DNA from: Chrysemys picta bellii
Lineage: Eukaryota
DNA length: 64,000 nucleotides
Direction: 5' to 3'
Assembly (NCBI RefSeq): GCF_011386835.1
Contig: NC_088791.1
Span: 194,060,001-194,124,000, forward strand
Part shown: positions 4,770 through 62,684 of the stretch, piece by piece
How positions within the stretch are numbered: the first letter of the stretch is position 1
How the letters are laid out: every line of letters starts with the position of its first letter
Position numbers and translations under genes: made by a program
The notes under the pieces: model-generated
Told to the model about the DNA's origin: nothing
What the model saw: the letters and a program-made list of their open reading frames with translations, nothing else
Databases searched by the model: none

Positions 4770-5460
4770 ACCAGACATTCTGGTCAAAAACCAGACACGC
4801 GGCAACAATCCTGTCATCACCTGGCAGCCCTGCCACAGACACTCCCCAGTAACCTGGTGCATCTCACAGGCACCCCCCACCTGGGAATGAGGGAAGGACG
4901 CAGGGGCCACCAGTGCTGGGCAGAGGGACACACTCGTGCCGGGCCCGGCTGTTACCTATGTTGGTCCAGACCACGGCATTGTCCAGATGGAAAGAGAGTG
5001 TCACTGCCCAGCCCCAGTCCCTGGCAACCACCTCCTCTCGGGGCCGGCCCCTTCTCCTCGCCCACCCCTAGCAGCTCCGGTTTGCCCTCTGCCACCCGCC
5101 GGAGATGCTGGGCTCCACTGGCCTGGGCGGGGACCATCGCCGGATACCACCCTACGAGCAGGAGGTCTGGGGCCAACTGCTGGCACAGGACTCCTCATCG
5201 CTGTCCCCTTCCCAGGTGTACATGGCGGTGCCGGGTGCCTTGCGGCTGGGGGGGGGGGCGGCTGAACCTTTAAATTGTGCCCCCCCACTAGCAACGTGTG
5301 CAGTTTGGGGGCAGCGCCCCCCATAATCCTACAAACTCCACCCATGCCCCCTGGCACTATGGGGAAAGGGCCTCAGGCAGGAGCTATGTTGTTGAGGCCG
5401 AGGGACCATTTCTCGTTATGCTACCCCACAGGGTGCCAGAAATCAGAAGTTTTCTAGGGA
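4770..5460. mobile_element. GC-rich hAT-type MITE(s); paralog at ~55190-56010
   Basis: AAAAACCAGACAC..TGGCAAC terminal-like motif and GC-rich body; duplicated with the segmental duplication. Confidence 0.5.
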
Positions 5461-5918
5461 AAATGGGCCACAGGATCTCTGCAGCGATATCTATGGGTGG
5501 TGATTCAAACTGTCTGGAATTGTTGATAAATTGTATCGTTTGACCACACTTTGGTTCATTATTTTGTTATGAAATATACTCAAGAGCCCAAATAACCAAT
5601 GTCAGGCAGGTTTATTAATATGGCACAGGAACAAGGTTCAATATGATACCAGACTCCAAAAAGTCGGCCTGTGGGGCTATGTGGCATTCCCCTTACACTG
5701 ACGGTGCGTTCCCCCGTTACAAATTTCAGCTGCTATTATATATGATTTTACAAGTTACACATTTTGACAAGTTTCATGTCTGCTTGTGCCAAATGTTTAG
5801 TTAAGTAAATGCAAGGTATTATGGGATACTAAGCTTAAGTGAATGAACAGGATTATGGCATAGGCTGTTTCAGCGATATCACTGTTAAGAACATAAGAAT
5901 GGCCATAGTGGGTGAGAC

Positions 5919-6449
5919 ATTGGAGAGGCCTCATCTGGAGTACTGTGTCCAGTTTTGGGCCCCACACTACAAGAAGGATGTGGAAAAATTGGAAAGAGTC
6001 CAGCGGAGGGCAACAAAAATGATTAGGGGTCTGGAGCACATGACTTATGAGGAGAGGCTGAGGGAACTGGGATTGTTTAGTCTCCAGAAGAGAAGAATGA
6101 GGGGGGATATGATAGCAGCCTTCAACTACCTGAAGGGGGGTTCCAAAGAGGATGGAGCTCGGCTGTTCTCAGTGGTGGCAGATGACAGAACAAGAAGCAA
6201 TGGTCTCAAGTTGCAGTGGGGGAGGTCCAGGTTGGATATCAGGAAAAACTATTTCACTAGGAGGGTGGTGAAACACTGGAATGCGTTACCTAGGGAGGTG
6301 GTGGAGTCTCCTTCCTTGGAGGTTTTTAAGGCCCGGCTTGAGAAAGCCCTGGCTGGGATGATTTAGCTGGGAATTGGTCCTGCTTTGAGCAGGGGGTTGG
6401 ACTAGATGACCTCTTGAGGTCCCTTCCAACTCTGATATTCTATGATTCT
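5919..6449 (+). mobile_element. Young 5'-truncated CR1 LINE with 7-bp TSD GTGAGAC (5912-5918 / 6450-6456)
   Basis: Uninterrupted ORF2 C-terminus ([33 protein letters not shown]...) and GATTCTATGATTCT tail; absent from the paralogous site at ~57535. Confidence 0.95.
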
Positions 6450-39702: not shown

Positions 39703-40976
39703 TGTAACAATGCGGTTCTGGCGGGACCCAACTGAGAGTGCCCATTCAGGACAAATCGCTTAAAACATGGCAGTTACAGCCCCAGGCTGGGGTTTTTCCA
39801 CCTCTAAGGCAAACCAAACCAGCCAGACTAAGAGGACTTTGGTCTCACCCCACTGGCTAACCACAAGTCACACAAGCAATTCCCTAAGACACTCCAGTTT
39901 CCCAGTATCACCACCAGTGCCACTCGTTATGGGGACAAATGGTTATGAAAACCAATACCCTAATAAAAGGAAAAAGGTTCTCCTGATCCCAAAAGACCAA
40001 GCCCCAGACCCAGGTCAATATACAAATCAGATCTTACCCACAAATCATGCTGTTGCCAATCCTTTAGAATCTAAAATCTAAAGGTTTATTCATAAAAGGA
40101 AAAAGATATAGATAATAAATAAATGGAGATATCCTATGTCTAGAACGGACCTTGAATCCAGCCCCCTGCCTTCACTAGCAGGACCAAATACTGATTTTGC
40201 CCCAGATCCATACGTGGTCCTCTCAAGGATTAAACTCACAACGCTGGGTTTAGCAGGCCAATGCTCAAACCACTGAGCTATCCCTCCCCCCTCATATAGA
40301 TGAGAGTTAGAATTGGTTAAATGGAATCAATGACATACAGTAATGGCAAAGTTCTTGGTTCAAGCTTGCAGCAGCAATACAATAAACTGCAGGTTCAAAT
40401 CAAGTCTCTGGAACATCCCCAGCTGGGATGGGTCATTCAGTCCTTTGTTCAGAGCTTTAGTTTGTAGCAAAGTCCCTCCAGAGGTAAGAAGCAGGATTGA
40501 AGACAAAATGGAGATGAGGCATCAGCCTTATATGGTCTTTTCCAGGTGTAAGAACACCTCTTTGTTCTTACTGTGGAAAATTACAGCAAAATGGAGTCTG
40601 GAGTCACATGGGCCAGTCCCTGCATACTTTTCTGAATCTCAAGGCATATTTGCCTTCTCTCAATGGGTTCATTGTATAGCTCATGGTCCTTAATGGGCCA
40701 TCAAGCAGGCTAGGCAGAGCTAACACCAACTTGTCTGGGTGTCACCCAGAAGCATAGCATAAGTTTGAAATACAGACAGTATAGAGCCAATATTCATAAC
40801 TTCAACTACAAAACTGATACACACATATAGACAGCATAATCATAACCAGCAAACTATAACCTTGTCTTAGACACCCCATTTGACCCCCGCCCCTTTACAA
40901 GATTTGGTGCCACTACAGTACCTTGTTCTATGCAACCATGTTCTATATAGTCCCAGATTATGTCAATAACGTCACA
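39703..40976 (-). mobile_element. Gypsy (Gmr1-family) solo LTR, 5-bp TSD GGAGG, containing a SINE
   Basis: TGTAACAATG...GTCACA; homologous to the 45298 and 50554 LTRs; GGAGG at 39698-39702 and 40977-40981. Confidence 0.92.
40113..40292 (-). mobile_element. tRNA-derived SINE inserted in the solo LTR (TSD about ATATAGAT)
   Basis: Reverse complement GGGGAGGGATAGCTCAGTGGTTTGAGC..GAGTTTAATCC..GATATCTCCATTTATTTATT; absent from the other LTR copies. Confidence 0.85.
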
Positions 40977-43990: not shown

Positions 43991-46266
43991 AACACACGTA
44001 CACTTTCACAATTACACAATAAAACAAGGTTCACAGTATTGCATCTGGTCTCTCACTTCATTTCGTTTATATATCTCAGTGGTCTCCAAAGTGGGGTGCG
44101 CAAGAGGATCCTTCACTTCCTCCCCTCTCACAACGCTGCAGAAGCGGAGCCACAGAGCAGCTGGGGATCCAGCGTGGGGGCTGAGAACCCACGGGACCCT
44201 GGGAGCTGTAGTTCCTTGGCCAGCTCCCTGCCTAGAGAGCCAGCCCTGGAGCAGGGAAAGAACTACCTTTCCCAGCAATCCCTTGGCAGCTATCAACAGG
44301 AAAGGGAGGGGGAGGGAGTGAGGTAGCTGAGCCATGCTGCAGCTTGCTGTGAGTCGAAAGGGGTGGCACTGTGAATGGGGAACAAGTGTGCCCAAGGAGT
44401 AGAAGGCTTTGCCCCAGATATCCCCTTCAGAAGACTTCCCCAGACTGGATTAGGGATACTGGTATGACCTCACCTTGCAGCCCCCAAAGAAGGAATTGGG
44501 GGGGACTAAACGGACGGTGCACCTCTCTATCTGAAGCCTAGCAAGGGAGATACGTGGATCCCACTAGAATTTAAAATGAAAAGTAAGGGAGGGGAGGCTC
44601 TGGACCTGGGCAGCTTTAAATACAGTACCAGGCACTTAGGAGGATTTCCACTTCTGAGCCATGGAAGCAGAAATTGACTTTTCCTTTCCCGATATAGCTA
44701 ATATTCAGAAAGGGAATCTAGCACCTTCCTTCCAGATTTGAACACCCTCAAAATTCAGGAGTGCTCAAGCTCAATTCGGGCAGCTGTTACTTCATTTCTC
44801 CCAAATCAAATATACTGAGCCACTGTAACTTGCTGTAGGAAAAGTAGATTAAAATTGAGCAAGAAGTGTTTTTAGGACTGGAATTGCTATTTTCAACAGC
44901 CATTGCCTTTTTTTTCTTTTCTTTAGTTTTATTTGTTTAAAAGGAAGACAGTGATATTGCATTGGCAAATTCCCCAGAGAAAGAAAGAGTGGAACAAAAG
45001 AATAATAAAGGCACCTCGACTTATAATATGCATCCAGATATCCTCCAATCACACAAGCTGAAAACTGTTCCACTTTACTGCAGTTCTGTAACCATATGGG
45101 AACCAATCCTGTCTGTGTTCTGTGCACATCCAAAATTCTTGCTGAATGACCTGCCCTGGGAGCGAGTTACCAGTGACCCAGGGCTAGGACATCAGGAGGG
45201 TGCAGGTTGGGGGGAGAGCCCAGGGCTGGGGCAGCAGGGGGGTGGGGGGCACTGGTGGAGGGGAAAATGGGGAGCCCAGCGCTGGGGTGGCAGGGGGTGT
45301 GACAATGCGGTTCTGGGGGAACCCAACTGAGAGTGCCAACTCAGGACAAATTGCTCAAATAGGGCAGTTACAGCCCAAGGCTGGGGTTTTTTCCACCTCT
45401 AAGGCAAACCAAACCAGCCAGACTAAGAGGACTTCAGTCTCACCCCACTGGCTAACTGCAAGTCTCACAAGCAATCTCCTTAGATACTCCAGTTTCCCAG
45501 TATTACCACCAGTACCACTCGTTATGGGGACAAATGGTTATGAAAACCAATACCCCAGTAAAAGAAAAAGGTTCTCCTGATCCCAAAGGACCAAGCCCCA
45601 GACCCAGGTCAATATACAAATCAGATCTTACCCACAAATCACGCTGTTGTCAATCCTTTAGAATCTAAAATCTAAAGGTTTATTCATAAAAGGAGAAAGA
45701 TAGAGATGAGAGTTAGAATTGGTTAAAGGGAATCAATTACATACAGTAATGGCAAAGTTCTTGGTTCAGGCTTGCAGCAGCGATGGAATAAACTGCAGGT
45801 TCAAATCATGTCTCTGGAATACATCCCCCGCTGGGATGGGTCCTCAGTCCTTTGTTCCAAGCTTCAGCTTGTAGCAAAGTTCCTCCAGAGGTAAGAAGCA
45901 GGATTGAAGACAAGATGGAGATCAGGCATCAGCCTTATATAGTCTTTTCCAGGTGTAAGAACACCTCTTTGTTCTTAAATTACAGCAACATGGAGTCTGG
46001 AGTCACATGGGCCAGTCCCTGCATACTTTGCTGAGGTACAAGGCGTACCTGCCTTCTCTCAATGGGTCCATTGTATAGCTGATGGTCCTTAATGGGCCAT
46101 TAAGCAGGCTAGGCAGAGCTAATCTCAGCTTGTCTGGGATGTCACCCAGAAGCATAGCATAAGTTTGCCATACAGACAGTATAGAGCCAATATTCATAAC
46201 TTGGACTACAAAACTGATACACACATATAGACAGCATAATCATAACCAGTAAACCATAACCTTGTC

Positions 46267-49200
46267 CTAGACACCCCATTTGACCCCCTTTATACAAGAT
46301 TTGGGTGCCACTACAGGACCTTGGTTGCAACAATGATCTATATGGTCCCAGTTTATGTCAATAACGTCACACCCCCAACGCAAAATTGATGCAGGAAGGG
46401 ATGACACAAACATCACTGACTGCATCCCAAGAGCTCCCCATCCTGGGTTCTGTCTCACTACAGCTAGTATTGGGTTAGAAGCCATACCAGTGTATAACAG
46501 AAATGGTTTATCAAAATCATGTTCAACCACATGATTGAACCTCTTTACAAACTCAAGGTAACACTTAGTTAGAACAATAGTGGATTGGATCTGCTCTGGC
46601 AGCATGGTTCCTGTATGTGCCATGTGATCTTGCCAAGAGCTAAAGAAAACTGCTACTTTATTCATACAAGCTCGGGCCAATGTTTGGAACCCAATTAACA
46701 TCGAATAAATGCAGATATTAATGTTCTTCATAGTCCAGGAATCTTGGCATTTAGCCATGAAAGCAATATGGTAGTGTGCCTCAGTCTTCCTTTTCATACA
46801 GCACATTAGGTCTGGAATGTCCTTTCCCCTGTGAAAAGTTCCCATATTGTTTATATGCATTGCCTGTGAAACCCCAGTGTAACAAGGCCTTTTAACATAA
46901 CGTGTGTTTTCATGTATTCCTTTTAACATGTTCAAGGAATTCTCCAAAAGATTAGGCACATTGTATATTTTTACAGTTTGTGGCAATAGCAACACATTAA
47001 TTACAAAATTTAGCAATAACAACAAGTTCATTGCAAGTGTCCATCTACAGTCATGTTTGTCATGCCACCCCTTTGGCTCAATACCATTGGAGTTTGGGCA
47101 TTTTAGGGTTAACCTGCGGCTTCCCTTTGCAAAATTCAGTTTTCTCTTTCCTCCTTGTCCTGCAGGATCAAACCCTGATTTCTTTTGCTTAACAGAATTC
47201 ACTGGCTGATGGGGTGGGCCCTCTTTGCTAACAGCTATTAGCAAGTCCTTCCTTTCCCAGCCAGGCAAGTAATTTGCACTACCCCAGACCAGAGCCAGTC
47301 CACCAGTTTTCATATTCGTAACTGCTATCATCTCCAAGGCTGGACTCTGTCTTAAAGAGATACCACACAAATCCAAAGAGTCTGCGGGTGAGAGTTTGCT
47401 TCCTCTCCCCCGCATCCTCAAGCATTTAGCCATAAAACTGCTCTGCTCTGACACATCAGTAACCAAATCTGTCCTCAAACCCTGAAGCACAAACTGCTCA
47501 TTTAAAGAATCAGAAAGGAGACATTCCTGTTCCAACACCATTGTCTCCCCAACAAGTCGGCCCCACACAGCCACTGGGTTATAGGGATGCCTCAATTCCT
47601 TAACAACTTTTACTTCCTCTGAGACCTTCTTAAAGCTACCCACACTGGATCTTTTACAAGGAAAGTTAGTGGATCCCTTCCTAGGAACTGAAACTTTCTT
47701 GATTAAATCACTTTCACACCCTTCAATTGCAGGGAACTGCTTGCACCGAGTACCATGAGGATTCCTTTCTTCAGGAGCTTTTTTAAGCAGCAATTCACCC
47801 CTCACAGAAATTCTGCCCATACCCTCTTCACCTAGGGCTTGCTCTAAAGGCACACTTTCCTGAGCAACAACAGACTCTGTCTGGGTCTTACTTACATTCA
47901 GGATCACCTTTGGCCCATCAGGCAGATCTCTACACAATCCCCTTTCAGGCGAACCCATAGACTTCCTAGATAAAAGGTTAGAAATACTTCCCTTCTCTTT
48001 GCCACACACAAGCTTAGGAATTTTTTCCTTTTTGCTACAAGTTGTTAAACTGTCGGTAGGTAACACAACCAAATTACCTTTCTGCTCTCCTTGTGCCCTG
48101 GCTAGGGTATCACCCTGATCAGACAGAGTTGTTACACCCTTCTCCAACCACACATGAGCAACAGGCAAAATACAAGCACCAGAATTGTTTGGTCTCTGGG
48201 ATTTTGCTAAGCCACTAACTGGATGCAACCTAGTTACGGGGCCATTCTCCCCAGCAGATGCAAACTTAGGACCATTCCCTTCCTGGGCTTTAGTTGAATC
48301 CAGAACCAACTCTGAGACAACTAAATTACTCTCAACCATCACAGGCCGAAAGGCACCTTCCGTCTGCTCCACAGACAAAAAAGAGTTGGAGACGCATTTT
48401 CCTTTACTAGACATACTGTTTGGGATTTCATTTCCCTTGTCCCAGCACACCGGGCTGTTCACAGACAACTGCTTGGAGACTGGGGTAGCTTCCTCCATAG
48501 GCAAGTTAATACCCCTGACAGACACAGGCACATTTCCTTCACTGTCACTATTCTTCGCACAGGAAACAGATAAGGTATAGGGACACTCATCTTCCACTCT
48601 CCTTGCCTTCCCAAACTGCTGACTAGATAAAGCCATCAGCTCACAAGACTGCCTAGGCTCATCCAAAATCTCCTTGTTCTCCTCTCCCTTCGCTTGATCT
48701 AATTCCAGATTTACTTCTGAGACCTTAGATAGACATTCAGAAACTTCGTTCACAGCCAAACAGCTACTTTCCAAAGACAAACTTTTGGAGAAACCCTCCA
48801 TAGGCACAACCTTAGGATCAATCCTCTCTTGTGCCTGGTTTGTATTAACTTGACTGACCATAGCTTTAATATCATTTCCAATCATAATATCCTTAGGGAT
48901 TATGTCTTTTACTCCCACAACCATGGTGCCCTCCAATCCCTTCCATTTCAGGTGGATTTTAGCCAAAGGCACCCTGACAAAATACTTAGATAAGGCTACA
49001 ACAGTTACATCTTCACCTGGCAAATAATCTTCCTTCCTGACAAGACTTGCTTTAACCAGAGTAATATCTGCTGCGGTGTCCCTCCATGCCATACACCTCA
49101 CTCCATTCACTTCTGCACTGCTAATAAACTCTGCATTATTTCCCCCATATTTAGCTTTAATGTGAGTTTTAAGGTCAAATCCTTCAGAGACAACAGAAAC

Positions 49201-50070
49201 AGCATTTGCACACAGGGCACCAATGCTGGGCTCTGTGTGGCTTGCCTGTGAGTTTACAACAACAGGGTTAGCATTGGCCGTGGCATTTGGGGTTGCTGGT
49301 TTTGGGCTGCCCTTCAGTGTCGGGCAGTCTGGTCTCATGTGGCCCAGCATACCACAGCGATAGCATGTAACCTGCTGGGGATGTGAGTTCCTACCCTCCG
49401 GGCCCCCTTGAACTCCTTTAGAAGAGTCAGGTTTATTTTTAAATCCTTCCCTCCTCTTGAACTGGGGAGAATGGTGATCAGTTTTCCCCGGGGTTTTACA
49501 CCCTTCTCGAGCCCTGTTTTGGGTATGGGCATCCGCAATCTCCGCCGCCCGTAGGACTGACTCAGGGTCCCTGTCACACACAGCTGCTCTCACATTGTCA
49601 GGCACAATGTCTAAGAACTGTTCCAAAGTTATTAAATCCAGCAGTTTTTCAAAACTCCCATGAACCTTGGCTCCCATAACCCACTTTTTAACAAAACCCA
49701 TCAGCTTATGAGCACATTCTACAAAAGTACAATCCTTAGGCATTTTAAACTCTCTAAACTTAACTCTGTAAGATTCAGGAGTAACCTTGAACCGCCTTAA
49801 CACAGAATCCTTAAACCGCTCATAATCTAAGGCTTCTTGTTCCCCCAAGTCATTAAACACCTCCCTGGCTTTTCCAGTCAGTCTGGTTAGCAGGACAGGC
49901 ATTCGCTGACCCTCAGGGATCTGGTACAGATTGCAGAGGCGTTCAAAGGTAGACAAGAACTCCTCTATATCCTCAGTATCATTGTAAATGGGACACATCC
50001 TTTCCCAGTTTTTCTCATGGCGGGGGGGAAGTGGAGTACCAGGTGAGGATGACTTTCTCCGCTCTTCCAT
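46267..50070 (-). CDS. Gag (SCAN-like capsid, CX2CX4HX4C) - protease (DTA) - degenerate IN/RT/RNaseH fusion, 1267 aa; ends inside the 3' LTR
   Basis: WERMCPIYNDTEDIEEFLSTFERLC...LITLEQFL...AAEIADAH; CYRCGMLGHMRPDC; WRDTAADITLV; RT-like ARACMNKVAVFFSSWQDHM; RNaseH-entry-like DFDKPFLLYT. Confidence 0.85.
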   Translation of the reverse strand: MEERRKSSSPGTPLPPRHEKNWERMCPIYNDTEDIEEFLSTFERLCNLYQIPEGQRMPVLLTRLTGKAREVFNDLGEQEALDYERFKDSVLRRFKVTPESYRVKFREFKMPKDCTFVECAHKLMGFVKKWVMGAKVHGSFEKLLDLITLEQFLDIVPDNVRAAVCDRDPESVLRAAEIADAHTQNRAREGCKTPGKTDHHSPQFKRREGFKNKPDSSKGVQGGPEGRNSHPQQVTCYRCGMLGHMRPDCPTLKGSPKPATPNATANANPVVVNSQASHTEPSIGALCANAVSVVSEGFDLKTHIKAKYGGNNAEFISSAEVNGVRCMAWRDTAADITLVKASLVRKEDYLPGEDVTVVALSKYFVRVPLAKIHLKWKGLEGTMVVGVKDIIPKDIMIGNDIKAMVSQVNTNQAQERIDPKVVPMEGFSKSLSLESSCLAVNEVSECLSKVSEVNLELDQAKGEENKEILDEPRQSCELMALSSQQFGKARRVEDECPYTLSVSCAKNSDSEGNVPVSVRGINLPMEEATPVSKQLSVNSPVCWDKGNEIPNSMSSKGKCVSNSFLSVEQTEGAFRPVMVESNLVVSELVLDSTKAQEGNGPKFASAGENGPVTRLHPVSGLAKSQRPNNSGACILPVAHVWLEKGVTTLSDQGDTLARAQGEQKGNLVVLPTDSLTTCSKKEKIPKLVCGKEKGSISNLLSRKSMGSPERGLCRDLPDGPKVILNVSKTQTESVVAQESVPLEQALGEEGMGRISVRGELLLKKAPEERNPHGTRCKQFPAIEGCESDLIKKVSVPRKGSTNFPCKRSSVGSFKKVSEEVKVVKELRHPYNPVAVWGRLVGETMVLEQECLLSDSLNEQFVLQGLRTDLVTDVSEQSSFMAKCLRMRGRGSKLSPADSLDLCGISLRQSPALEMIAVTNMKTGGLALVWGSANYLPGWERKDLLIAVSKEGPPHQPVNSVKQKKSGFDPAGQGGKRKLNFAKGSRRLTLKCPNSNGIEPKGWHDKHDCRWTLAMNLLLLLNFVINVLLLPQTVKIYNVPNLLENSLNMLKGIHENTRYVKRPCYTGVSQAMHINNMGTFHRGKDIPDLMCCMKRKTEAHYHIAFMAKCQDSWTMKNINICIYSMLIGFQTLARACMNKVAVFFSSWQDHMAHTGTMLPEQIQSTIVLTKCYLEFVKRFNHVVEHDFDKPFLLYTGMASNPILAVVRQNPGWGALGMQSVMFVSSLPASILRWGCDVIDINWDHIDHCCNQGPVVAPKSCIKGVKWGV

Positions 50071-50435
50071 TACTTGGAGCTGAAGTCTGGCCGTCTCGCA
50101 GCGAGCAGCTCTAGACGCCCCTTACGAGCTCTCTCTTCTCTCTCATCAGCCTCCTTCTCTAATTCTGCTATTTTTTGCTTCTCCAGCAATCGAAGATCTG
50201 CTAGCTTCTGTTCATGCTCAAATTGCAGTTTACTTGTCACCCTTTGCATCCTAATTTTTTCTGCATCTTCTGCAGCCTCAGGTAAGGGCTGTGCTCTTGC
50301 CCCCTGATCACTGGCTATCAGCAGATTTCTCAATTCTTCCTTTGTAGCTTTCTTTCTAAAGCTTATCCTCTTTTCTGAACACAAATTTTCCAGGGCTTTT
50401 TTCCCAAGTTCCTCATATGCTCTTTGCTCAGCCAT
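50070..50435 (-). CDS. Gag N-terminal ORF (small helical domain plus coiled coil), 121 aa
   Basis: YEELGKKALENLCSEKRISFRKKATKEELRNLL followed by an E/K/R-rich heptad region; its stop TAA overlaps the ATG of the next ORF (TAATG). Confidence 0.75.
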   Translation of the reverse strand: MAEQRAYEELGKKALENLCSEKRISFRKKATKEELRNLLIASDQGARAQPLPEAAEDAEKIRMQRVTSKLQFEHEQKLADLRLLEKQKIAELEKEADEREERARKGRLELLAARRPDFSSK

Positions 50436-50541
50436 TGCAGCAGCTCTTTAACCAACAAAACTCTCAATCCCAAAATTCAAATTTGGATAGCGTGGGGTTC
50501 TGACCCAAAGCTTAATTGACCTGGTTCTGTGGATCCAAGCA

Positions 50542-50552
50542 CGACTACGCCA
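50542..50552 (-). promoter_or_regulatory. Primer-binding site for tRNA-Ser
   Basis: TGGCGTAGTCG one base inside the 5' LTR; complementary to the 3' end of vertebrate tRNA-Ser (...CGACUACG-CCA). Confidence 0.85.
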
Positions 50553-52169
50553 CTGTGACAATGCGGTTCTGGGGGAACCCAACTGAGAGTGCCAACTCAG
50601 GACAAATTGCTCAAATAGGGCAGTTACAGCCCAAGGCTGGGGTTTTTTCCACCTCTAAGGCAAACCAAACCAGCCAGACTAAGAGGACTTCAGTCTCACC
50701 CCACTGGCTAACTGCAAGTCTCACAAGCAATCTCCTTAGATACTCCAGTTTCCCAGTATTACCACCAGTACCACTCGTTATGGGGACAAATGGTTATGAA
50801 AACCAATACCCCAGTAAAAGAAAAAGGTTCTCCTGATCCCAAAGGACCAAGCCCCAGACCCAGGTCAATATACAAATCAGATCTTACCCACAAATCACGC
50901 TGTTGTCAATCCTTTAGAATCTAAAATCTAAAGGTTTATTCATAAAAGGAGAAAGATAGAGATGAGAGTTAGAATTGGTTAAAGGGAATCAATTACATAC
51001 AGTAATGGCAAAGTTCTTGGTTCAGGCTTGCAGCAGCGATGGAATAAACTGCAGGTTCAAATCATGTCTCTGGAATACATCCCCCGCTGGGATGGGTCCT
51101 CAGTACTTTGTTCCAAGCTTCAGCTTGTAGCAAAGTTCCTCCAGAGGTAAGAAGCAGGATTGAAGACAAGATGGAGATCAGGCATCAGCCTTATATAGTC
51201 TTTTCCAGGTGTAAGAACACCTCTTTGTTCTTAAATTACAGCAACATGGAGTCTGGAGTCACATGGGCCAGTCCCTGCATACTTTGCTGAGGTACAAGGC
51301 GTACCTGCCTTCTCTCAATGGGTCCATTGTATAGCTGATGGTCCTTAATGGGCCATTAAGCAGGCTAGGCAGAGCTAATCTCAGCTTGTCTGGGATGTCA
51401 CCCAGAAGCATAGCATAAGTTTGCCATACAGACAGTATAGAGCCAATATTCATAACTTGGACTACAAAACTGATACACACATATAGACAGCATAATCATA
51501 ACCAGTAAACCATAACCTTGTCCTAGACACCCCATTTGACCCCCTTTATACAAGATTTGGGTGCCACTACAGGACCTTGGTTGCAACAATGATCTATATG
51601 GTCCCAGTTTATGTCAATAACGTCACAGGGGGTGGGGAGAGAACCCAGGGCTGGGGCAGCAGGGGAGTGCAGGGGAGGGGGGAGGAGCCCAGGGCTGGGG
51701 TGGGGGGCAGCCAAATGTTTTTTTTTGCTTGGGGCAGCAAAAAACCTAGAGCCGGCCCTGTAGATGCTCCAGCCCAGGGTTCTCTAACACGGGTCAACTG
51801 ACTCAAGTCCCACTAACCCTGGGCTTACAGGGCAGTGTAGACATACCCTAAAGTCCAAACTGCCACTCCCATGGTCTCTGAGTCCCAAAACAAGGTGCCT
51901 CCTGCCTCTTGCAGTGTGAACTCAGAGTGGCAAGCCCCAGTTTTAGCTGTGTTGCTCTGGCCGCCGGGCTGGTCCGGGCTCCTCCACTACATCTGGGCTG
52001 GTCTCCCAGCCCAGCTGTGAATGTGCCCTGGCCAGCTCTCGGGGCTAATCCCTTAGCGCCTGCACCCCCAACTTCAGGCTGTGTCAGGGCCTCTTTATTA
52101 CAACAACAGCAACAGCAACATGTGTTCTCCATAAGCCACATGGTCCTTCTCTCTCCACGCCCCAGAGGT

Positions 52170-61606: not shown

Positions 61607-62684
61607 TGTGACAATGCGGTTCTGGCGGAACCCAACTGAGAGTGCCAACTCAGGACAAATTGCTAAAATAGGGCAGTTACAGCCCAAGGCCGGGGTTTTT
61701 CCACCTCTAAGGCAAACCAAACCAGCCAGACTAATACTTCGGTCTCACCCCACTGGCTAACCGCAAGTCTCACAAGCAATCTCATTAGACACTCCAGTTT
61801 CCCAGTATCACCACCAGTGCCACACGTTATGGGGACAAATGGTTATAAAAACCAATACCCCAGTAAAAGAAAAAGGTTCTCCTGATCCCAAAGGACCAAG
61901 CCCCAGACCCAGGTCAATATACAAGTCAGACCTTACCCACAAATCACGCTACTGCCAATCCTTTAGAATCTAAAATCTAAAGGTTTATTCATAAAAGGAA
62001 AAAGATAGAGATGAGAGTTAGAATTGGTTAAATGGAATCAATTACATACAGTAATGGCAAAGTTCTTGGTTCAGGCTTGCAGCAGCGATGGAATAAACTG
62101 CAGGTTCAAATCAAGTCTCTGGAATACATCCCCAGCTGGGATGGGTCATTCAGTCCTTTGTTCAGAGCTTCAGTTTGTAGCAAAGTCCCTCCAGAGGTAA
62201 GAAGCAGGATTGAAGACCAGATGTAGATCAGGCATCAGCCTTATATAGTCTTTTCCAGGTGTAAGAACACTCTTTGTTCCTACTGTGGAAAATTACAACA
62301 AAATGGAGTCTGGAGTCACATGGGCCAGTCCCTGCATACTTTGCTGAGGTACAAGGCATATCTGCCTTCTCTCAATGGGTCCATTGTATAGCTGATGGTC
62401 CTTAATGGGCCATCAAGCAGGCTAGGCAGAGCTAATCTCAGCTTGTCTGGGATGTCACCCAGAAGCATAGCATAAGTTTGCCATACAGACAGTATAGAGC
62501 CAATATTCATAACTTCGACTACAAAACTGATACATACATATAGACAGCATAATCATAACCAGTAAACCATAACCTTGTCCTAGACACCCCATTTGACCCC
62601 CTTTATACAAGATTTGGGTGCCACTACAGGACCTTGGTTGCAACAATGATCTATATGGTCCCAGTTTATGTCAATAACGTCACA
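61607..62684 (-). mobile_element. Gypsy (Gmr1-family) solo LTR, 5-bp TSD TCCAC
   Basis: TGTGACAATG...GTCACA; TCCAC at 61602-61606 and 62685-62689; empty site TCCGC at 10770-10774 in copy 1. Confidence 0.95.

What the first reader, a model, noticed from the sequence alone, without database searches (positions are those of the whole stretch)
46267..48900. Young non-autonomous Gmr1 element keeps a dead, shrunken pol in an unbroken ~850-codon frame
Seen in the sequence: after gag and the protease, the 1267-aa ORF continues about 850 codons with no stop, through AT-rich sequence, and terminates only 35 codons inside the 3' LTR. By eye it contains remnants in Gmr1 order (PR-IN-RT-RH). These are: GRISVRGELLLKK (like the IN N-terminal GRF...GLLYR); WGSANYL...HQPVNSVK (like the IN C-terminal GAVNYL...YHVNSLK); ARACMNKVAVFFSSWQDHM (aligns with AYIDDIxVFSxTWEDHM, with catalytic YIDD changed to CMNK at 46657-46668); and DFDKPFLLYT (RNaseH entry). 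Established: IN upstream of RT and a SCAN-related capsid define Gmr1-like elements. Inference: these domains are heavily diverged and deleted, yet the LTRs differ at only one base seen (45849 C vs 51105 A). A long-lived, still-mobile lineage therefore appears to be selected to keep the frame open rather than the enzymes. Possible reasons are cis-preferential packaging, avoiding nonsense-mediated decay of a long 3' UTR, or a repurposed Gag-fusion (capsid) protein.
Basis: partly seen in the sequence, partly recalled or inferred. Interest (0 to 1): 0.82.

Follow-up and report, generated by a model that had tools for sequence, protein, structure and literature searches.

The report
Turtle retrotransposon keeps dead pol readable
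A recently inserted, helper-dependent turtle Gmr1-like retrotransposon carries about 820 codons of wrecked polymerase sequence whose amino acids drift freely yet almost never acquire a stop or frameshift, so what is being preserved seems to be readability by the ribosome and not a working protein.

Summary

**The element**
- It spans window 45298-51627 on the minus strand. It has 1074-bp LTRs differing at one base and a 5-bp target duplication.
- It is a non-autonomous Gmr1-like element of emydid turtles.
- An autonomous partner in Chrysemys (P0010/L002) has the order gag-PR-IN-RT-RH. It shares the LTRs and gag at about 93% DNA identity, but no DNA similarity across the 2.8-kb interior.

**Pol remnants**
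- Four collinear pol remnants are significant by shuffling: the pre-IN linker, the IN C-terminus, RT motif C (YIDD changed to CMNK) and the RNase H entry.
- About 500 residues match nothing.

**Selection**
- Codon models give omega 0.11-0.32 for gag and 0.13 for the protease-like domain.
- The tail gives omega 0.94-1.08.
- The tail has 0 stops in 822 codons, against 53 and 76 in the other sense frames.
- Relatives in Pelodiscus, Emydura, Chelonia and Chelonoidis share the cassette, and the young copies there keep frames of 800 to 940 codons.

**Corrections**
- The window copy is itself broken upstream by a 49-nt gap in the gag coiled coil.
- The element is a chimera, not a recent deletion derivative.

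**Mechanism (inferred)**
- Most likely, uninterrupted translation almost to the 3' LTR protects the genomic RNA from nonsense-mediated decay.

The parts
50554..51627 (-). 5' LTR (1074 bp, TG...CA ends). A TATA-like box lies at LTR position 431 and AATAAA at 688.
45298..46371 (-). 3' LTR, differing from the 5' LTR at one base (45849 against 51105).
45293..45297 (.). 5-bp target-site duplication GGGGG. The other copy is at 51628-51632.
50535..50552 (-). Primer-binding-site-like sequence beginning TGG, one base after the 5' LTR. The tRNA was not identified with tools.
50070..50435 (-). Upstream 121-aa ORF holding the gag N-terminus (SAP-like helix pair plus coiled coil). It is cut off from the main frame in this copy.
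50097..50098 (-). Break point: a 49-nt gap relative to sister copies L006 and L007, inside 21-bp coiled-coil repeats. It is not a multiple of three.
46267..50070 (-). Main 1267-codon ORF, including the stop.
49510..49779 (-). SCAN-like capsid C-terminal domain (Pfam SCAN, E 2e-13).
49321..49368 (-). CCHC zinc knuckle (nucleocapsid).
49279..49281 (-). Approximate recombination boundary at codon 264. DNA similarity to the autonomous partner (92.8%) ends here.
48841..49171 (-). Retropepsin-like domain, 53% identical to the partner's protease. The catalytic DTG reads DTA (49066-49080). It is still under purifying selection (omega 0.13).
47971..48840 (-). Tail segment X (codons 411-700). It has no detectable pol similarity and no predicted fold, and evolves neutrally at the amino-acid level.
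48085..48361 (-). Island conserved at the nucleotide level (73-74% identical to Pelodiscus copies), with differences spread evenly over codon positions. It is a possible cis-acting RNA element; the evidence is inconclusive.
47698..47970 (-). Remnant of the PR-IN linker and integrase lead-in (GRISVRGELLLKK against GRFFMQDGLLYRE).
46999..47697 (-). Codons 792-1024, occupying the position of the integrase zinc-binding and catalytic core. No significant similarity is left.
46714..46998 (-). Remnant of the integrase C-terminal region (codons 1025-1119). The leucine-rich predicted helix (codons 1012-1029, 46984-47037) overlaps only its first few codons and lies mostly in the preceding segment.
46555..46710 (-). 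Remnant of RT motif C and the start of the thumb. YIDD is changed to CMNK (46657-46668). The preceding ~180 residues of RT are absent.
46435..46518 (-). Remnant of the RNase H entry (DFDKPFLLYT...ASNPILAVVRQ).
46372..46434 (-). Segment 93% identical to the partner's pol end, 3' UTR and pre-LTR sequence. Here it is read through in a different frame from the partner's stop.
46267..46371 (-). The last 34 sense codons plus the stop, which are simply U3 of the 3' LTR.

Best explanation
**What it is (shown)**
- It is a young, non-autonomous member of a turtle Gmr1-like LTR retrotransposon family.
- It is a recombinant. The LTRs, leader and gag are close to those of an autonomous gag-PR-IN-RT-RH element in the same kind of genome.
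- Everything from the protease onward is an old cassette derived from pol. It has lost RT, integrase and RNase H function and is largely unrecognisable.

**How it evolves (shown)**
- Gag and the protease-like domain evolve under purifying selection.
- The roughly 820-codon tail accumulates amino-acid changes at the neutral rate.
- Even so, stops and frame-breaking indels are purged from the tail in lineages that keep transposing.
- The reading frame itself therefore behaves like a cis-acting requirement.

**Why (inferred)**
- The autonomous element is expressed as one long ORF that ends just before the 3' LTR, so its genomic RNA has a short 3' UTR.
- A premature stop in the parasite's RNA would leave more than 3 kb untranslated. 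That would expose the unspliced RNA to Upf1-dependent nonsense-mediated decay, leaving fewer genomes to be packaged by the helper's particles.
- Keeping ribosomes running to within about 0.05-0.5 kb of the LTR, or into it, avoids this.
- The tail's sequence, its length within limits, and its exact end are free to vary.

**My confidence**
- Identity and selection pattern: about 0.85.
- The decay-avoidance mechanism specifically: about 0.4.
For: **Structure and youth**
- LTRs differ at 1 of 1074 bases and a target duplication is present.
- Pfam finds only SCAN and zf-CCHC in the ORF.

**Partner and chimerism**
- Partner P0010 has SCAN, CCHC, Integrase_H2C2, rve, RVT_1 and RT_RNaseH in that order.
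- It shares el 1-2349 and el 5182-6330 at about 93% DNA identity, and nothing between.
- Gag dS is 0.12, while the PR-like region has pS 0.81.

**Remnants**
- Four collinear segments are significant, with P from 2e-4 to 1e-12.

**Selection**
- ML omega for gag is 0.11 (P 4e-5). The tail gives 0.94 (P 0.82) in 4 Chrysemys-type copies, and Pelodiscus copies give 0.85 (P 0.29).
- With 8 copies from 4 genera, the tail gives 1.08 (P 0.44) and the PR-like domain 0.13 (P 1e-4).
- Variable sites are 12 synonymous to 4 nonsynonymous in gag, and 18 to 44 in the tail, which is the neutral ratio.
- Differences by codon position are 23/25/21 in the tail and 27/17/49 in gag.

**Frame**
- The tail has 0 stops in 822 codons, against 53 and 76 in the other sense frames.
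- In the window's register, the Chelonia and Chelonoidis copies have 0 stops. They carry about 400 and 250 base differences. At about 3.5% stop-creating changes, roughly 7 and 4 stops would be expected on those lineages.
- The only indel in the tail among Chrysemys-type copies is 21 nt. The 1.2-kb LTR and leader carry several 1-, 2- and 8-nt indels.

**Depth**
- Collinear cassettes occur in LTR elements with 98.8-99.7% identical LTRs in Pelodiscus (891- and 802-codon frames) and Emydura (931 codons).
- A profile search of 1.84 billion proteins returned 34 hits. All 10 whose source I looked up, plus three named, are turtle proteins.

**Tail is not a designed protein**
- AlphaFold2 gives mean pLDDT 29.
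- The C-terminal ~60 codons translate the partner's 3' UTR homologue and U3.
- Pelodiscus and one Chrysemys subfamily (P0060) lack capsid and nucleocapsid but keep the open tail.

**Precedent**
- Premature stops in the unspliced Rous sarcoma virus RNA cause Upf1- and translation-dependent decay in chicken cells (PMC2925335).
Against: - No RNA, ribosome or decay data exist for this element, so the mechanism is inference only.
- If only an open frame mattered, in-frame deletions should have shrunk the tail away. Yet 535-857 codons persist in every lineage, so something else may also be constrained (length, a cis-acting RNA, or a sequence-independent protein property).
- The Emydura copy tolerates 478 nt between its stop and the LTR. 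One young Chrysemys copy (L011) carries a nonsense codon.
- Most sister copies were found through annotated gene models, which favours intact frames.
- Omega near 1 cannot exclude a disordered region selected for composition or length.
Confidence: 0.5

Rival explanations
1. The tail is a functional, intrinsically disordered extension of Gag. Selection would act on its presence, length or composition, not on its exact sequence. For example, it could work in cis on the RNA that encoded it, as the mouse IAP 1-delta-1 gag-pol fusion protein does. Or it could mimic the bulky Pol part of the helper's polyprotein during co-assembly.
For: - Gag and the PR-like domain encoded in the same frame are constrained, so a protein is made and matters.
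- The tail persists at 535-857 codons instead of being deleted.
- No fold is predicted, which is compatible with disorder.
- There is a precedent: the IAP 1-delta-1 fusion protein acts in cis (PMC6466679).
Against: - Omega is indistinguishable from 1 in every tail segment.
- Even the best-conserved island shows no excess of third-position differences.
- The ORF end is incidental readthrough of UTR and U3.
- The Pelodiscus form lacks capsid and nucleocapsid altogether. That weakens a Gag-assembly role, though not a coiled-coil-mediated one.
Confidence: 0.25
2. The cassette is kept for a cis-acting RNA element such as a packaging, export or stability signal. The open frame is needed only so that ribosomes or decay factors do not interfere with it, or it is a secondary effect.
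For: - An island at 48085-48361 is 73-74% identical to Pelodiscus at the nucleotide level, while the rest cannot be aligned by blastn. Its differences are even across codon positions.
- RNAalifold finds 69 pairs, 5 of them with compensatory changes.
- Column-shuffle z is -4.9.
Against: - Dinucleotide-shuffle z is only -1.3 and -2.1.
- Many other windows of the element fold as well or better.
- Only two effectively independent lineages are compared.
- Rfam finds nothing.
- An RNA element alone does not explain 822 stop-free codons.
Confidence: 0.12
3. There is no selection on the frame. On this view the element is a recent deletion derivative whose ORF has not yet had time to break, or the intact copies are an artefact of looking only at annotated ORFs.
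For: - The copies are very young.
- Three of the four Chrysemys sister copies and all of the foreign copies came from gene models.
- Within Chrysemys alone only about 2-3 stops would be expected.
Against: - The interior has no DNA similarity to the autonomous pol, and its PR-like part is saturated at synonymous sites.
- The cassette is shared with Pelodiscus and Emydura at dS above 1, and the frames there are still open.
- The Chelonia copy has 0 stops in register even beyond its own frameshift, where no gene model selected for an intact frame.
- ML tree length is about 0.9 substitutions per codon over 767 codons, with a single stop observed.
Confidence: 0.03
4. It is a domesticated host gene derived from a Gmr1-like gag, like the SCAN-domain genes, and not a mobile element.
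For: NCBI annotates sister copies as 'uncharacterized protein LOC...' with a SCAN domain.
Against: - It is multi-copy, and each copy is flanked by near-identical LTRs. A target duplication was confirmed for the window copy.
- The copies lie on different chromosomes.
- Solo LTRs of the family lie nearby.
- The tail evolves neutrally.
Confidence: 0.01

Closest known systems
Gmr1-like LTR retrotransposons (Ty3/mdg4-related; SCAN-like capsid; domain order PR-IN-RT-RH). [quoted passage not shown]
   Same: - The element has LTRs with TG...CA ends and a 5-bp duplication.
- Its gag has a SCAN-like capsid and a CCHC knuckle.
- Its pol remnants are collinear in the order IN, then RT, then RH.
- A partner in the same genome has exactly this architecture as one 1530-aa ORF.
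   Different: - No RT, integrase or RNase H domain is detectable by Pfam.
- The catalytic motifs are changed (YIDD to CMNK, DTG to DTA).
- The RT fingers and palm are deleted, and about 500 residues are of unrecognisable origin.
- The element must rely on a helper.
Mouse IAP 1-delta-1 elements: non-autonomous, with a 1.9-kb deletion that creates an in-frame gag-pol fusion protein acting in cis (PMC6466679).
   Same: - Both are non-autonomous LTR elements that keep one long in-frame gag-pol-derived ORF.
- Both outnumber or rival their helper among recent insertions.
   Different: - IAP 1-delta-1 is a recent single deletion with recognisable gag and pol on either side.
- Here the pol-derived part is ancient, shared across turtle suborders, unrecognisable over most of its length and neutral at the amino-acid level.
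- A cis function has not been tested here.
Non-autonomous LTR elements without coding capacity, or with gag only (LARD, TRIM, mouse ETn, VL30; barley BARE-2, cited from my own knowledge).
   Same: - They depend on an autonomous partner with matching LTR, PBS and PPT.
- They are chimeric or recombinant with that partner.
   Different: Those elements have lost long ORFs, or they stop after gag. This one maintains an extra 820 or so codons of open frame without amino-acid constraint.
Rous sarcoma virus premature-stop decay and the RNA stability element (PMC2925335).
   Same: Both involve an unspliced retroelement RNA in a sauropsid host that is vulnerable to Upf1-dependent decay when translation ends far from the 3' end.
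   Different: - RSV solves the problem with a structured RNA element placed after the gag stop.
- Here the proposed solution is simply never to stop, and it is untested.

Membership tests
Gmr1-like LTR retrotransposon | Long terminal repeats with TG...CA ends and a short target-site duplication | tested here: met
   The LTRs are 1074 bp with one mismatch, and the duplication is GGGGG.
Gmr1-like LTR retrotransposon | Gag with a SCAN-like capsid C-terminal domain and a CCHC zinc knuckle | tested here: met
   Pfam SCAN has E 2e-13 and zf-CCHC has E 1e-4.
Gmr1-like LTR retrotransposon | Integrase encoded upstream of reverse transcriptase (PR-IN-RT-RH) | tested here: met
   The remnants are collinear with partner P0010 in that order. 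P0010's Pfam domains follow the same order.
Gmr1-like LTR retrotransposon (autonomous member) | Intact RT, RNase H, integrase and protease catalytic domains | tested here: not met
   There are no RVT_1, rve, RNase H or RVP hits at E up to 1. YIDD is changed to CMNK and DTG to DTA, and the RT N-terminal ~180 residues are absent.
Non-autonomous LTR retrotransposon parasitising an autonomous partner | Shares LTRs, leader and pre-LTR sequence with an autonomous element of the same genome | tested here: met
   It is about 93% identical to L002 over el 1-2349 and el 5182-6330. The pre-LTR sequence is conserved as far as Pelodiscus.
Non-autonomous LTR retrotransposon parasitising an autonomous partner | Evidence of recent mobility despite lacking its own enzymes | tested here: met
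   Five full-length copies on different chromosomes have LTR pairs 99.8-99.9% identical. Mobilisation by this particular partner is inferred, not shown.
LARD/TRIM-type non-coding non-autonomous elements | Internal region without a long ORF | tested here: not met
   The ORF is 1267-1441 codons.
IAP 1-delta-1-like gag-pol fusion elements | The fusion protein promotes retrotransposition of its own RNA in cis | not testable with these tools
   This needs a mobility assay. Only the in-frame architecture is shared.
Domesticated SCAN-domain host gene | Single-copy syntenic locus without LTRs, under purifying selection throughout | tested here: not met
   The copies are multi-copy and flanked by LTRs, and tail omega is about 1.

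The most novel reading that the evidence does not exclude
About 2.5 kb of sequence has been maintained purely as an open reading frame, not as a protein. This has lasted since before the living turtle lineages split, in a helper-dependent retrotransposon. That would make ribosome transit to the 3' end a cis-acting fitness requirement of single-ORF retroelement RNAs, through evasion of nonsense-mediated decay or a related translation-coupled effect. The reading frame would then act as a regulatory element, seen here in nearly pure form.
Probability: 0.35. Interest if true: 0.8.

Novelty: new variant of a known kind. Interest (0 to 1): 0.66.

Why it matters
**A sharp and unusual contrast.** Non-autonomous LTR elements are usually thought to shed coding capacity. 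Conversely, an open frame is usually taken as evidence of a useful protein. Here gag (omega about 0.1-0.3) and a ~820-codon tail (omega about 1) sit in one frame, yet the tail is almost never interrupted.

**A natural test case.** If confirmed, it shows how host RNA surveillance shapes retroelement genomes. It also shows how parasites of parasites stay competitive with their helpers.

**A caution for annotation.** Sister copies are annotated as 1430-aa 'uncharacterized proteins'.

**Recombination.** Because the element is chimeric, an old cassette appears to be repeatedly re-fitted with up-to-date LTRs and gag by recombination.

Tried and rejected
**Searches that added little**
- Pfam on the ORF and on eight relatives found no pol domains in the tail.
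- A profile-profile comparison of the tail alignment with autonomous Gmr1 polyproteins gave only a weak hit to the pre-integrase linker (E 0.014, probability 3%). The pol remnants are therefore supported by the pairwise comparison with the same-genome partner plus shuffling, not by profiles.
- AlphaFold2 on the tail with a shallow 8-row alignment gave no usable model (pLDDT 29), so no fold search was run.
- Rfam found nothing in the element, and no tRNA gene was found in the window.

**Ideas dropped**
- I considered that segment X arose by tandem duplication of the PR-IN linker. Self-BLASTP of the window ORF finds no internal repeat, and only the Emydura copy shows a DNA-level duplication.
- A skew of differences towards codon position 1 in one Emydura segment suggested a hidden alternative frame. 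That region of the Emydura copy is full of stops in all frames, so I dropped the idea.
- Nei-Gojobori omega values of 0.55-0.7 first suggested weak constraint on the tail. Off-frame controls (0.77-1.06 in Pelodiscus, 0.44-0.79 in the cross-species comparisons) and ML with kappa of about 3-6 show this is mostly a transition-bias artefact.

**Limits of the sample**
- An unbiased genome-wide census of copies was not possible. The DNA collections on hand hold no turtle genomes, and look-ups are by exact annotated protein only.

**Consensus lines**
- The alignment tools print a majority line by default. I did not use it.
Full report
**1. What is there**

On the minus strand of the window lies a complete LTR element, 45298-51627 (6330 bp).
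- They begin with TG and end with CA, and are flanked by a 5-bp duplication, GGGGG.
- The main ORF is 46267..50070, 1267 aa.
- Pfam finds only a SCAN domain (residues 98-187) and a CCHC knuckle (235-250). There is no protease, RT, integrase or RNase H hit at E up to 1.
- The ORF's last 34 sense codons and its stop lie in the 3' LTR.

**2. The open frame is not chance**

- Across codons 411-1232 the frame has no stop.
- The two other sense frames have 53 and 76 stops, and the antisense frames 19-43.
- The base composition (T 27.5%) predicts about 53 stops in a random frame of this length.

**3. Host and relatives**

- The tail (residues 420-1267) finds a 1430-aa 'uncharacterized protein' of Chrysemys picta bellii at 96% identity.
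- It also finds weaker collinear relatives in Chelonia, Chelonoidis, Pelodiscus (33% identity over 68% of the query) and Emydura.
- A profile of these against 1.84 billion representative proteins returns only 34 hits. All 10 whose source I looked up, plus three already named, are turtle proteins.
- The gag part finds an autonomous relative in Chrysemys, P0010. It is a single 1530-aa ORF with SCAN, CCHC, Integrase_H2C2, rve, integrase C-terminus, RVT_1 and RT_RNaseH in that order.
- That is the Gmr1 order described in the literature, which also reports Gmr1-like elements as abundant in turtles (bioRxiv 10.1101/2025.03.03.638093).

**4. Is the tail a dead pol?**

BLASTP of the window ORF against P0010 gives a strong match over gag and the protease, plus weak collinear matches further on. 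I tested each segment by local alignment against 300 shuffles.

| Window ORF residues | P0010 residues | What it is | P |
|---|---|---|---|
| 701-791 | 582-682 | PR-IN linker and integrase lead-in | 2e-8 |
| 1025-1119 | 972-1066 | Integrase C-terminus | 1.5e-5 |
| 1121-1170 | 1247-1298 | RT motif C and start of thumb (YIDD to CMNK) | 1e-12 |
| 1185-1212 | 1402-1428 | RNase H entry | 2e-4 |

- Residues 411-700 and 801-1000 show nothing significant.
- The adjacency of 1119/1121 to P0010 1066/1247 means that about 180 residues of RT (fingers and palm) are simply gone.
- The protease-like domain is 53% identical to the partner's, with DTG changed to DTA.
- A profile-profile comparison was only marginal.
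- AlphaFold2 sees no fold in the tail (mean pLDDT 29). The exceptions are helices at the RT-thumb remnant and at a leucine-rich stretch.

**5. The element is a chimera, not a recent deletion**

- At the DNA level the window element matches the autonomous locus L002 at 92.8% over the LTR, leader and gag, up to ORF codon ~264.
- It matches again at 93% from 75 nt before the 3' LTR onward.
- The 2.8 kb in between has no blastn similarity.
- Gag differs from the partner by dS 0.12 (omega 0.19). The protease-like part is saturated at synonymous sites (pS 0.81).
- The cassette therefore split from this autonomous lineage long before the gag and LTR did. This implies recombination that re-fitted an old cassette with a current LTR and gag.
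- Other 5' contexts point the same way. Pelodiscus copies and a second Chrysemys subfamily (P0060) join the SAP-like/coiled-coil N-terminus directly to the cassette without capsid or nucleocapsid. The Emydura copy has capsid and knuckle but no protease-like part.

**6. This copy is itself broken**

- Sister copies L006 and L007 have uninterrupted 1441- and 1430-codon ORFs that begin 163 to 174 codons upstream of the window ORF's first codon.
- In the window, a 49-nt gap relative to them lies at 50097/50098, inside 21-bp coiled-coil repeats. It puts the first 121 codons (50070..50435) out of frame with the rest.
- I describe the break only and propose no change.

**7. Selection**

Among four Chrysemys-type copies, all with LTR pairs 99.8-99.9% identical:
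- Variable sites in gag are 12 synonymous to 4 nonsynonymous.
- Variable sites in the tail are 18 to 44, which is the neutral ratio at kappa 4.

ML codon models (GY+F3X4):

| Region and sample | omega | P against omega = 1 |
|---|---|---|
| Gag, 4 Chrysemys-type copies | 0.11 | 4e-5 |
| Tail, 4 Chrysemys-type copies | 0.94 | 0.82 |
| Three Pelodiscus copies | 0.85 | 0.29 |
| Gag, 6 emydid copies | 0.32 | 3e-4 |
| Protease-like domain, 6 emydid copies | 0.13 | 1e-4 |
| Tail codons 466-1232, 8 copies from 4 genera | 1.08 | 0.44 |

- The eight-copy tail tree has a length of 0.914 substitutions per codon.
- Differences between the window and Pelodiscus in the best-conserved tail island fall 23/25/21 on codon positions 1/2/3. 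In gag (window against Emydura) they fall 27/17/49.
- Lower Nei-Gojobori values (0.55-0.7) are matched by off-frame controls and reflect transition bias.

**8. The frame is nevertheless protected**

- Read in the window's register, the Chelonia copy has 0 stops over 744 aligned codons and the Chelonoidis copy 0 over 351. The off-frames have 53/79 and 23/35.
- Those copies carry about 400 and 250 base differences from the window.
- About 3.5% of random changes create a stop. Roughly 7 and 4 stops would therefore be expected on those two lineages alone.
- For Chelonia this includes sequence beyond its own 1-nt frameshift, where no gene model selected for an intact frame.
- The eight-copy tree implies some 700 substitutions, hence roughly 25 expected stops. 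One is seen, in L011 at codon 863. The tree length includes some alignment noise.
- Among the Chrysemys-type copies the 2.5-kb tail has one indel, of 21 nt. The 1.2-kb LTR and leader have several indels of 1, 2, 3 and 8 nt.
- Indels among the Pelodiscus ORFs are 3, 12, 42 and 66 nt.
- Dead copies do decay. Chelonia has a frameshift. Chelonoidis has a 344-nt deletion. Trachemys has 19-nt and 1-nt deletions and no 3' LTR.

**9. Depth**

- Pelodiscus elements have LTRs 98.8% identical in L003 and 97.0% in L009. They keep 891- and 802-codon frames ending about 54 nt before the 3' LTR.
- The Emydura element (LTRs 99.7% identical) keeps 931 codons ending 478 nt before the LTR, with decayed cassette sequence after the stop.
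- Synonymous divergence between these and the window is saturated, with dS above 1.
- Cryptodira and Pleurodira are the deepest split of living turtles (my own knowledge). The cassette is therefore either about that old or has moved horizontally among turtles.
- Either way, the frame survived more divergence than a neutral frame could.

**10. Mechanism**

Shown:
- A protein-coding gag and protease-like part is under constraint.
- It is followed in frame by sequence with no amino-acid constraint but with strong selection against interruption.
- The frame ends at an incidental stop: it reads the homologue of the partner's 3' UTR in a different frame from the partner's stop, and then reads U3.

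Inferred:
- With TATA at LTR position 431 and AATAAA at 688, the present 3' UTR is about 0.6 kb.
- A stop at the end of the protease-like part would make it more than 3 kb.
- In Rous sarcoma virus, premature stops in the unspliced RNA cause Upf1- and translation-dependent decay (PMC2925335).
- I therefore favour avoidance of such decay as the reason the frame is kept (about 0.4).

Alternatives:
- The tail could be a sequence-independent role of a disordered Gag extension. This includes a cis effect like that of the IAP 1-delta-1 fusion protein (PMC6466679). I put this at about 0.25.
- The cassette could hold a cis-acting RNA element. The island at 48085-48361 has a consensus fold with 5 compensatory pairs and a column-shuffle z of -4.9. 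However, dinucleotide-shuffle z-scores are unremarkable, and other windows of the element fold as well.
- Persistence of 535-857 codons, where decay avoidance alone would allow shrinkage, is not explained by that hypothesis and may point to one of these alternatives.

**11. Verdict**

- It is a new variant of a known kind: a non-autonomous LTR element with a gag-pol-derived fusion frame.
- It carries an unusual evolutionary signature that I did not find described in the searchable literature.

Noticed in passing
window 39703-40976 and 61607-62684: Two solo LTRs of the same family lie in the window. They are 90-92% and about 95% identical to the element's LTRs. Each has its own 5-bp target duplication (GGAGG and TCCAC). 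The first carries an insertion of about 180 bp. That makes three insertions of this family within 64 kb.
   Followed up: partly
window 48085-48361 (-): The best-conserved stretch of the tail is 73-74% identical to Pelodiscus at the DNA level, with no codon-position pattern in the differences. It has an RNAalifold consensus structure with 5 compensatory pairs. The shuffle controls disagree with each other, so a cis-acting RNA element is possible but unproven.
   Followed up: partly
window 48841-49171 (-): The protease-like domain has DTA in place of DTG, yet evolves under clear purifying selection in emydid copies (omega 0.13). In the Chelonia, Pelodiscus and Emydura forms it is degenerate or absent. 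Its role is unknown; it could be active, act as a dimerisation partner, or poison the helper's protease.
   Followed up: partly
window 50100-50330 (-); L001, L006, L007, L002: The gag coiled coil contains tandem 21-bp and roughly 33-bp repeat units whose copy number differs between every copy examined. All the differences are in-frame except the 49-nt gap in the window copy. This is a hot spot for slippage.
   Followed up: partly
L001 8249-8469: A sister copy in Chrysemys has an insertion of about 221-233 bp, with inverted-repeat character, 60 bp into its 3' LTR. The NCBI gene model treats it as an intron.
   Followed up: no
L003 2723-4862: A 2.1-kb satellite array of 34-bp units abuts the 5' LTR of the Pelodiscus copy. 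A short piece of it recurs right after the 3' LTR, so the element inserted into the satellite.
   Followed up: no
P0002, P0004, P0005 (Chelonia mydas draft annotation): Fragments of this cassette are fused in old gene models to an olfactory receptor, a DDE transposase and a zinc-finger protein. These chimeric annotations should not be read as real proteins.
   Followed up: partly
window 50535-50552 (-): The first 11 bases of the primer-binding-site-like sequence look complementary to the 3' end of a vertebrate serine tRNA. This is from memory only and was not checked with any tool.
   Followed up: no
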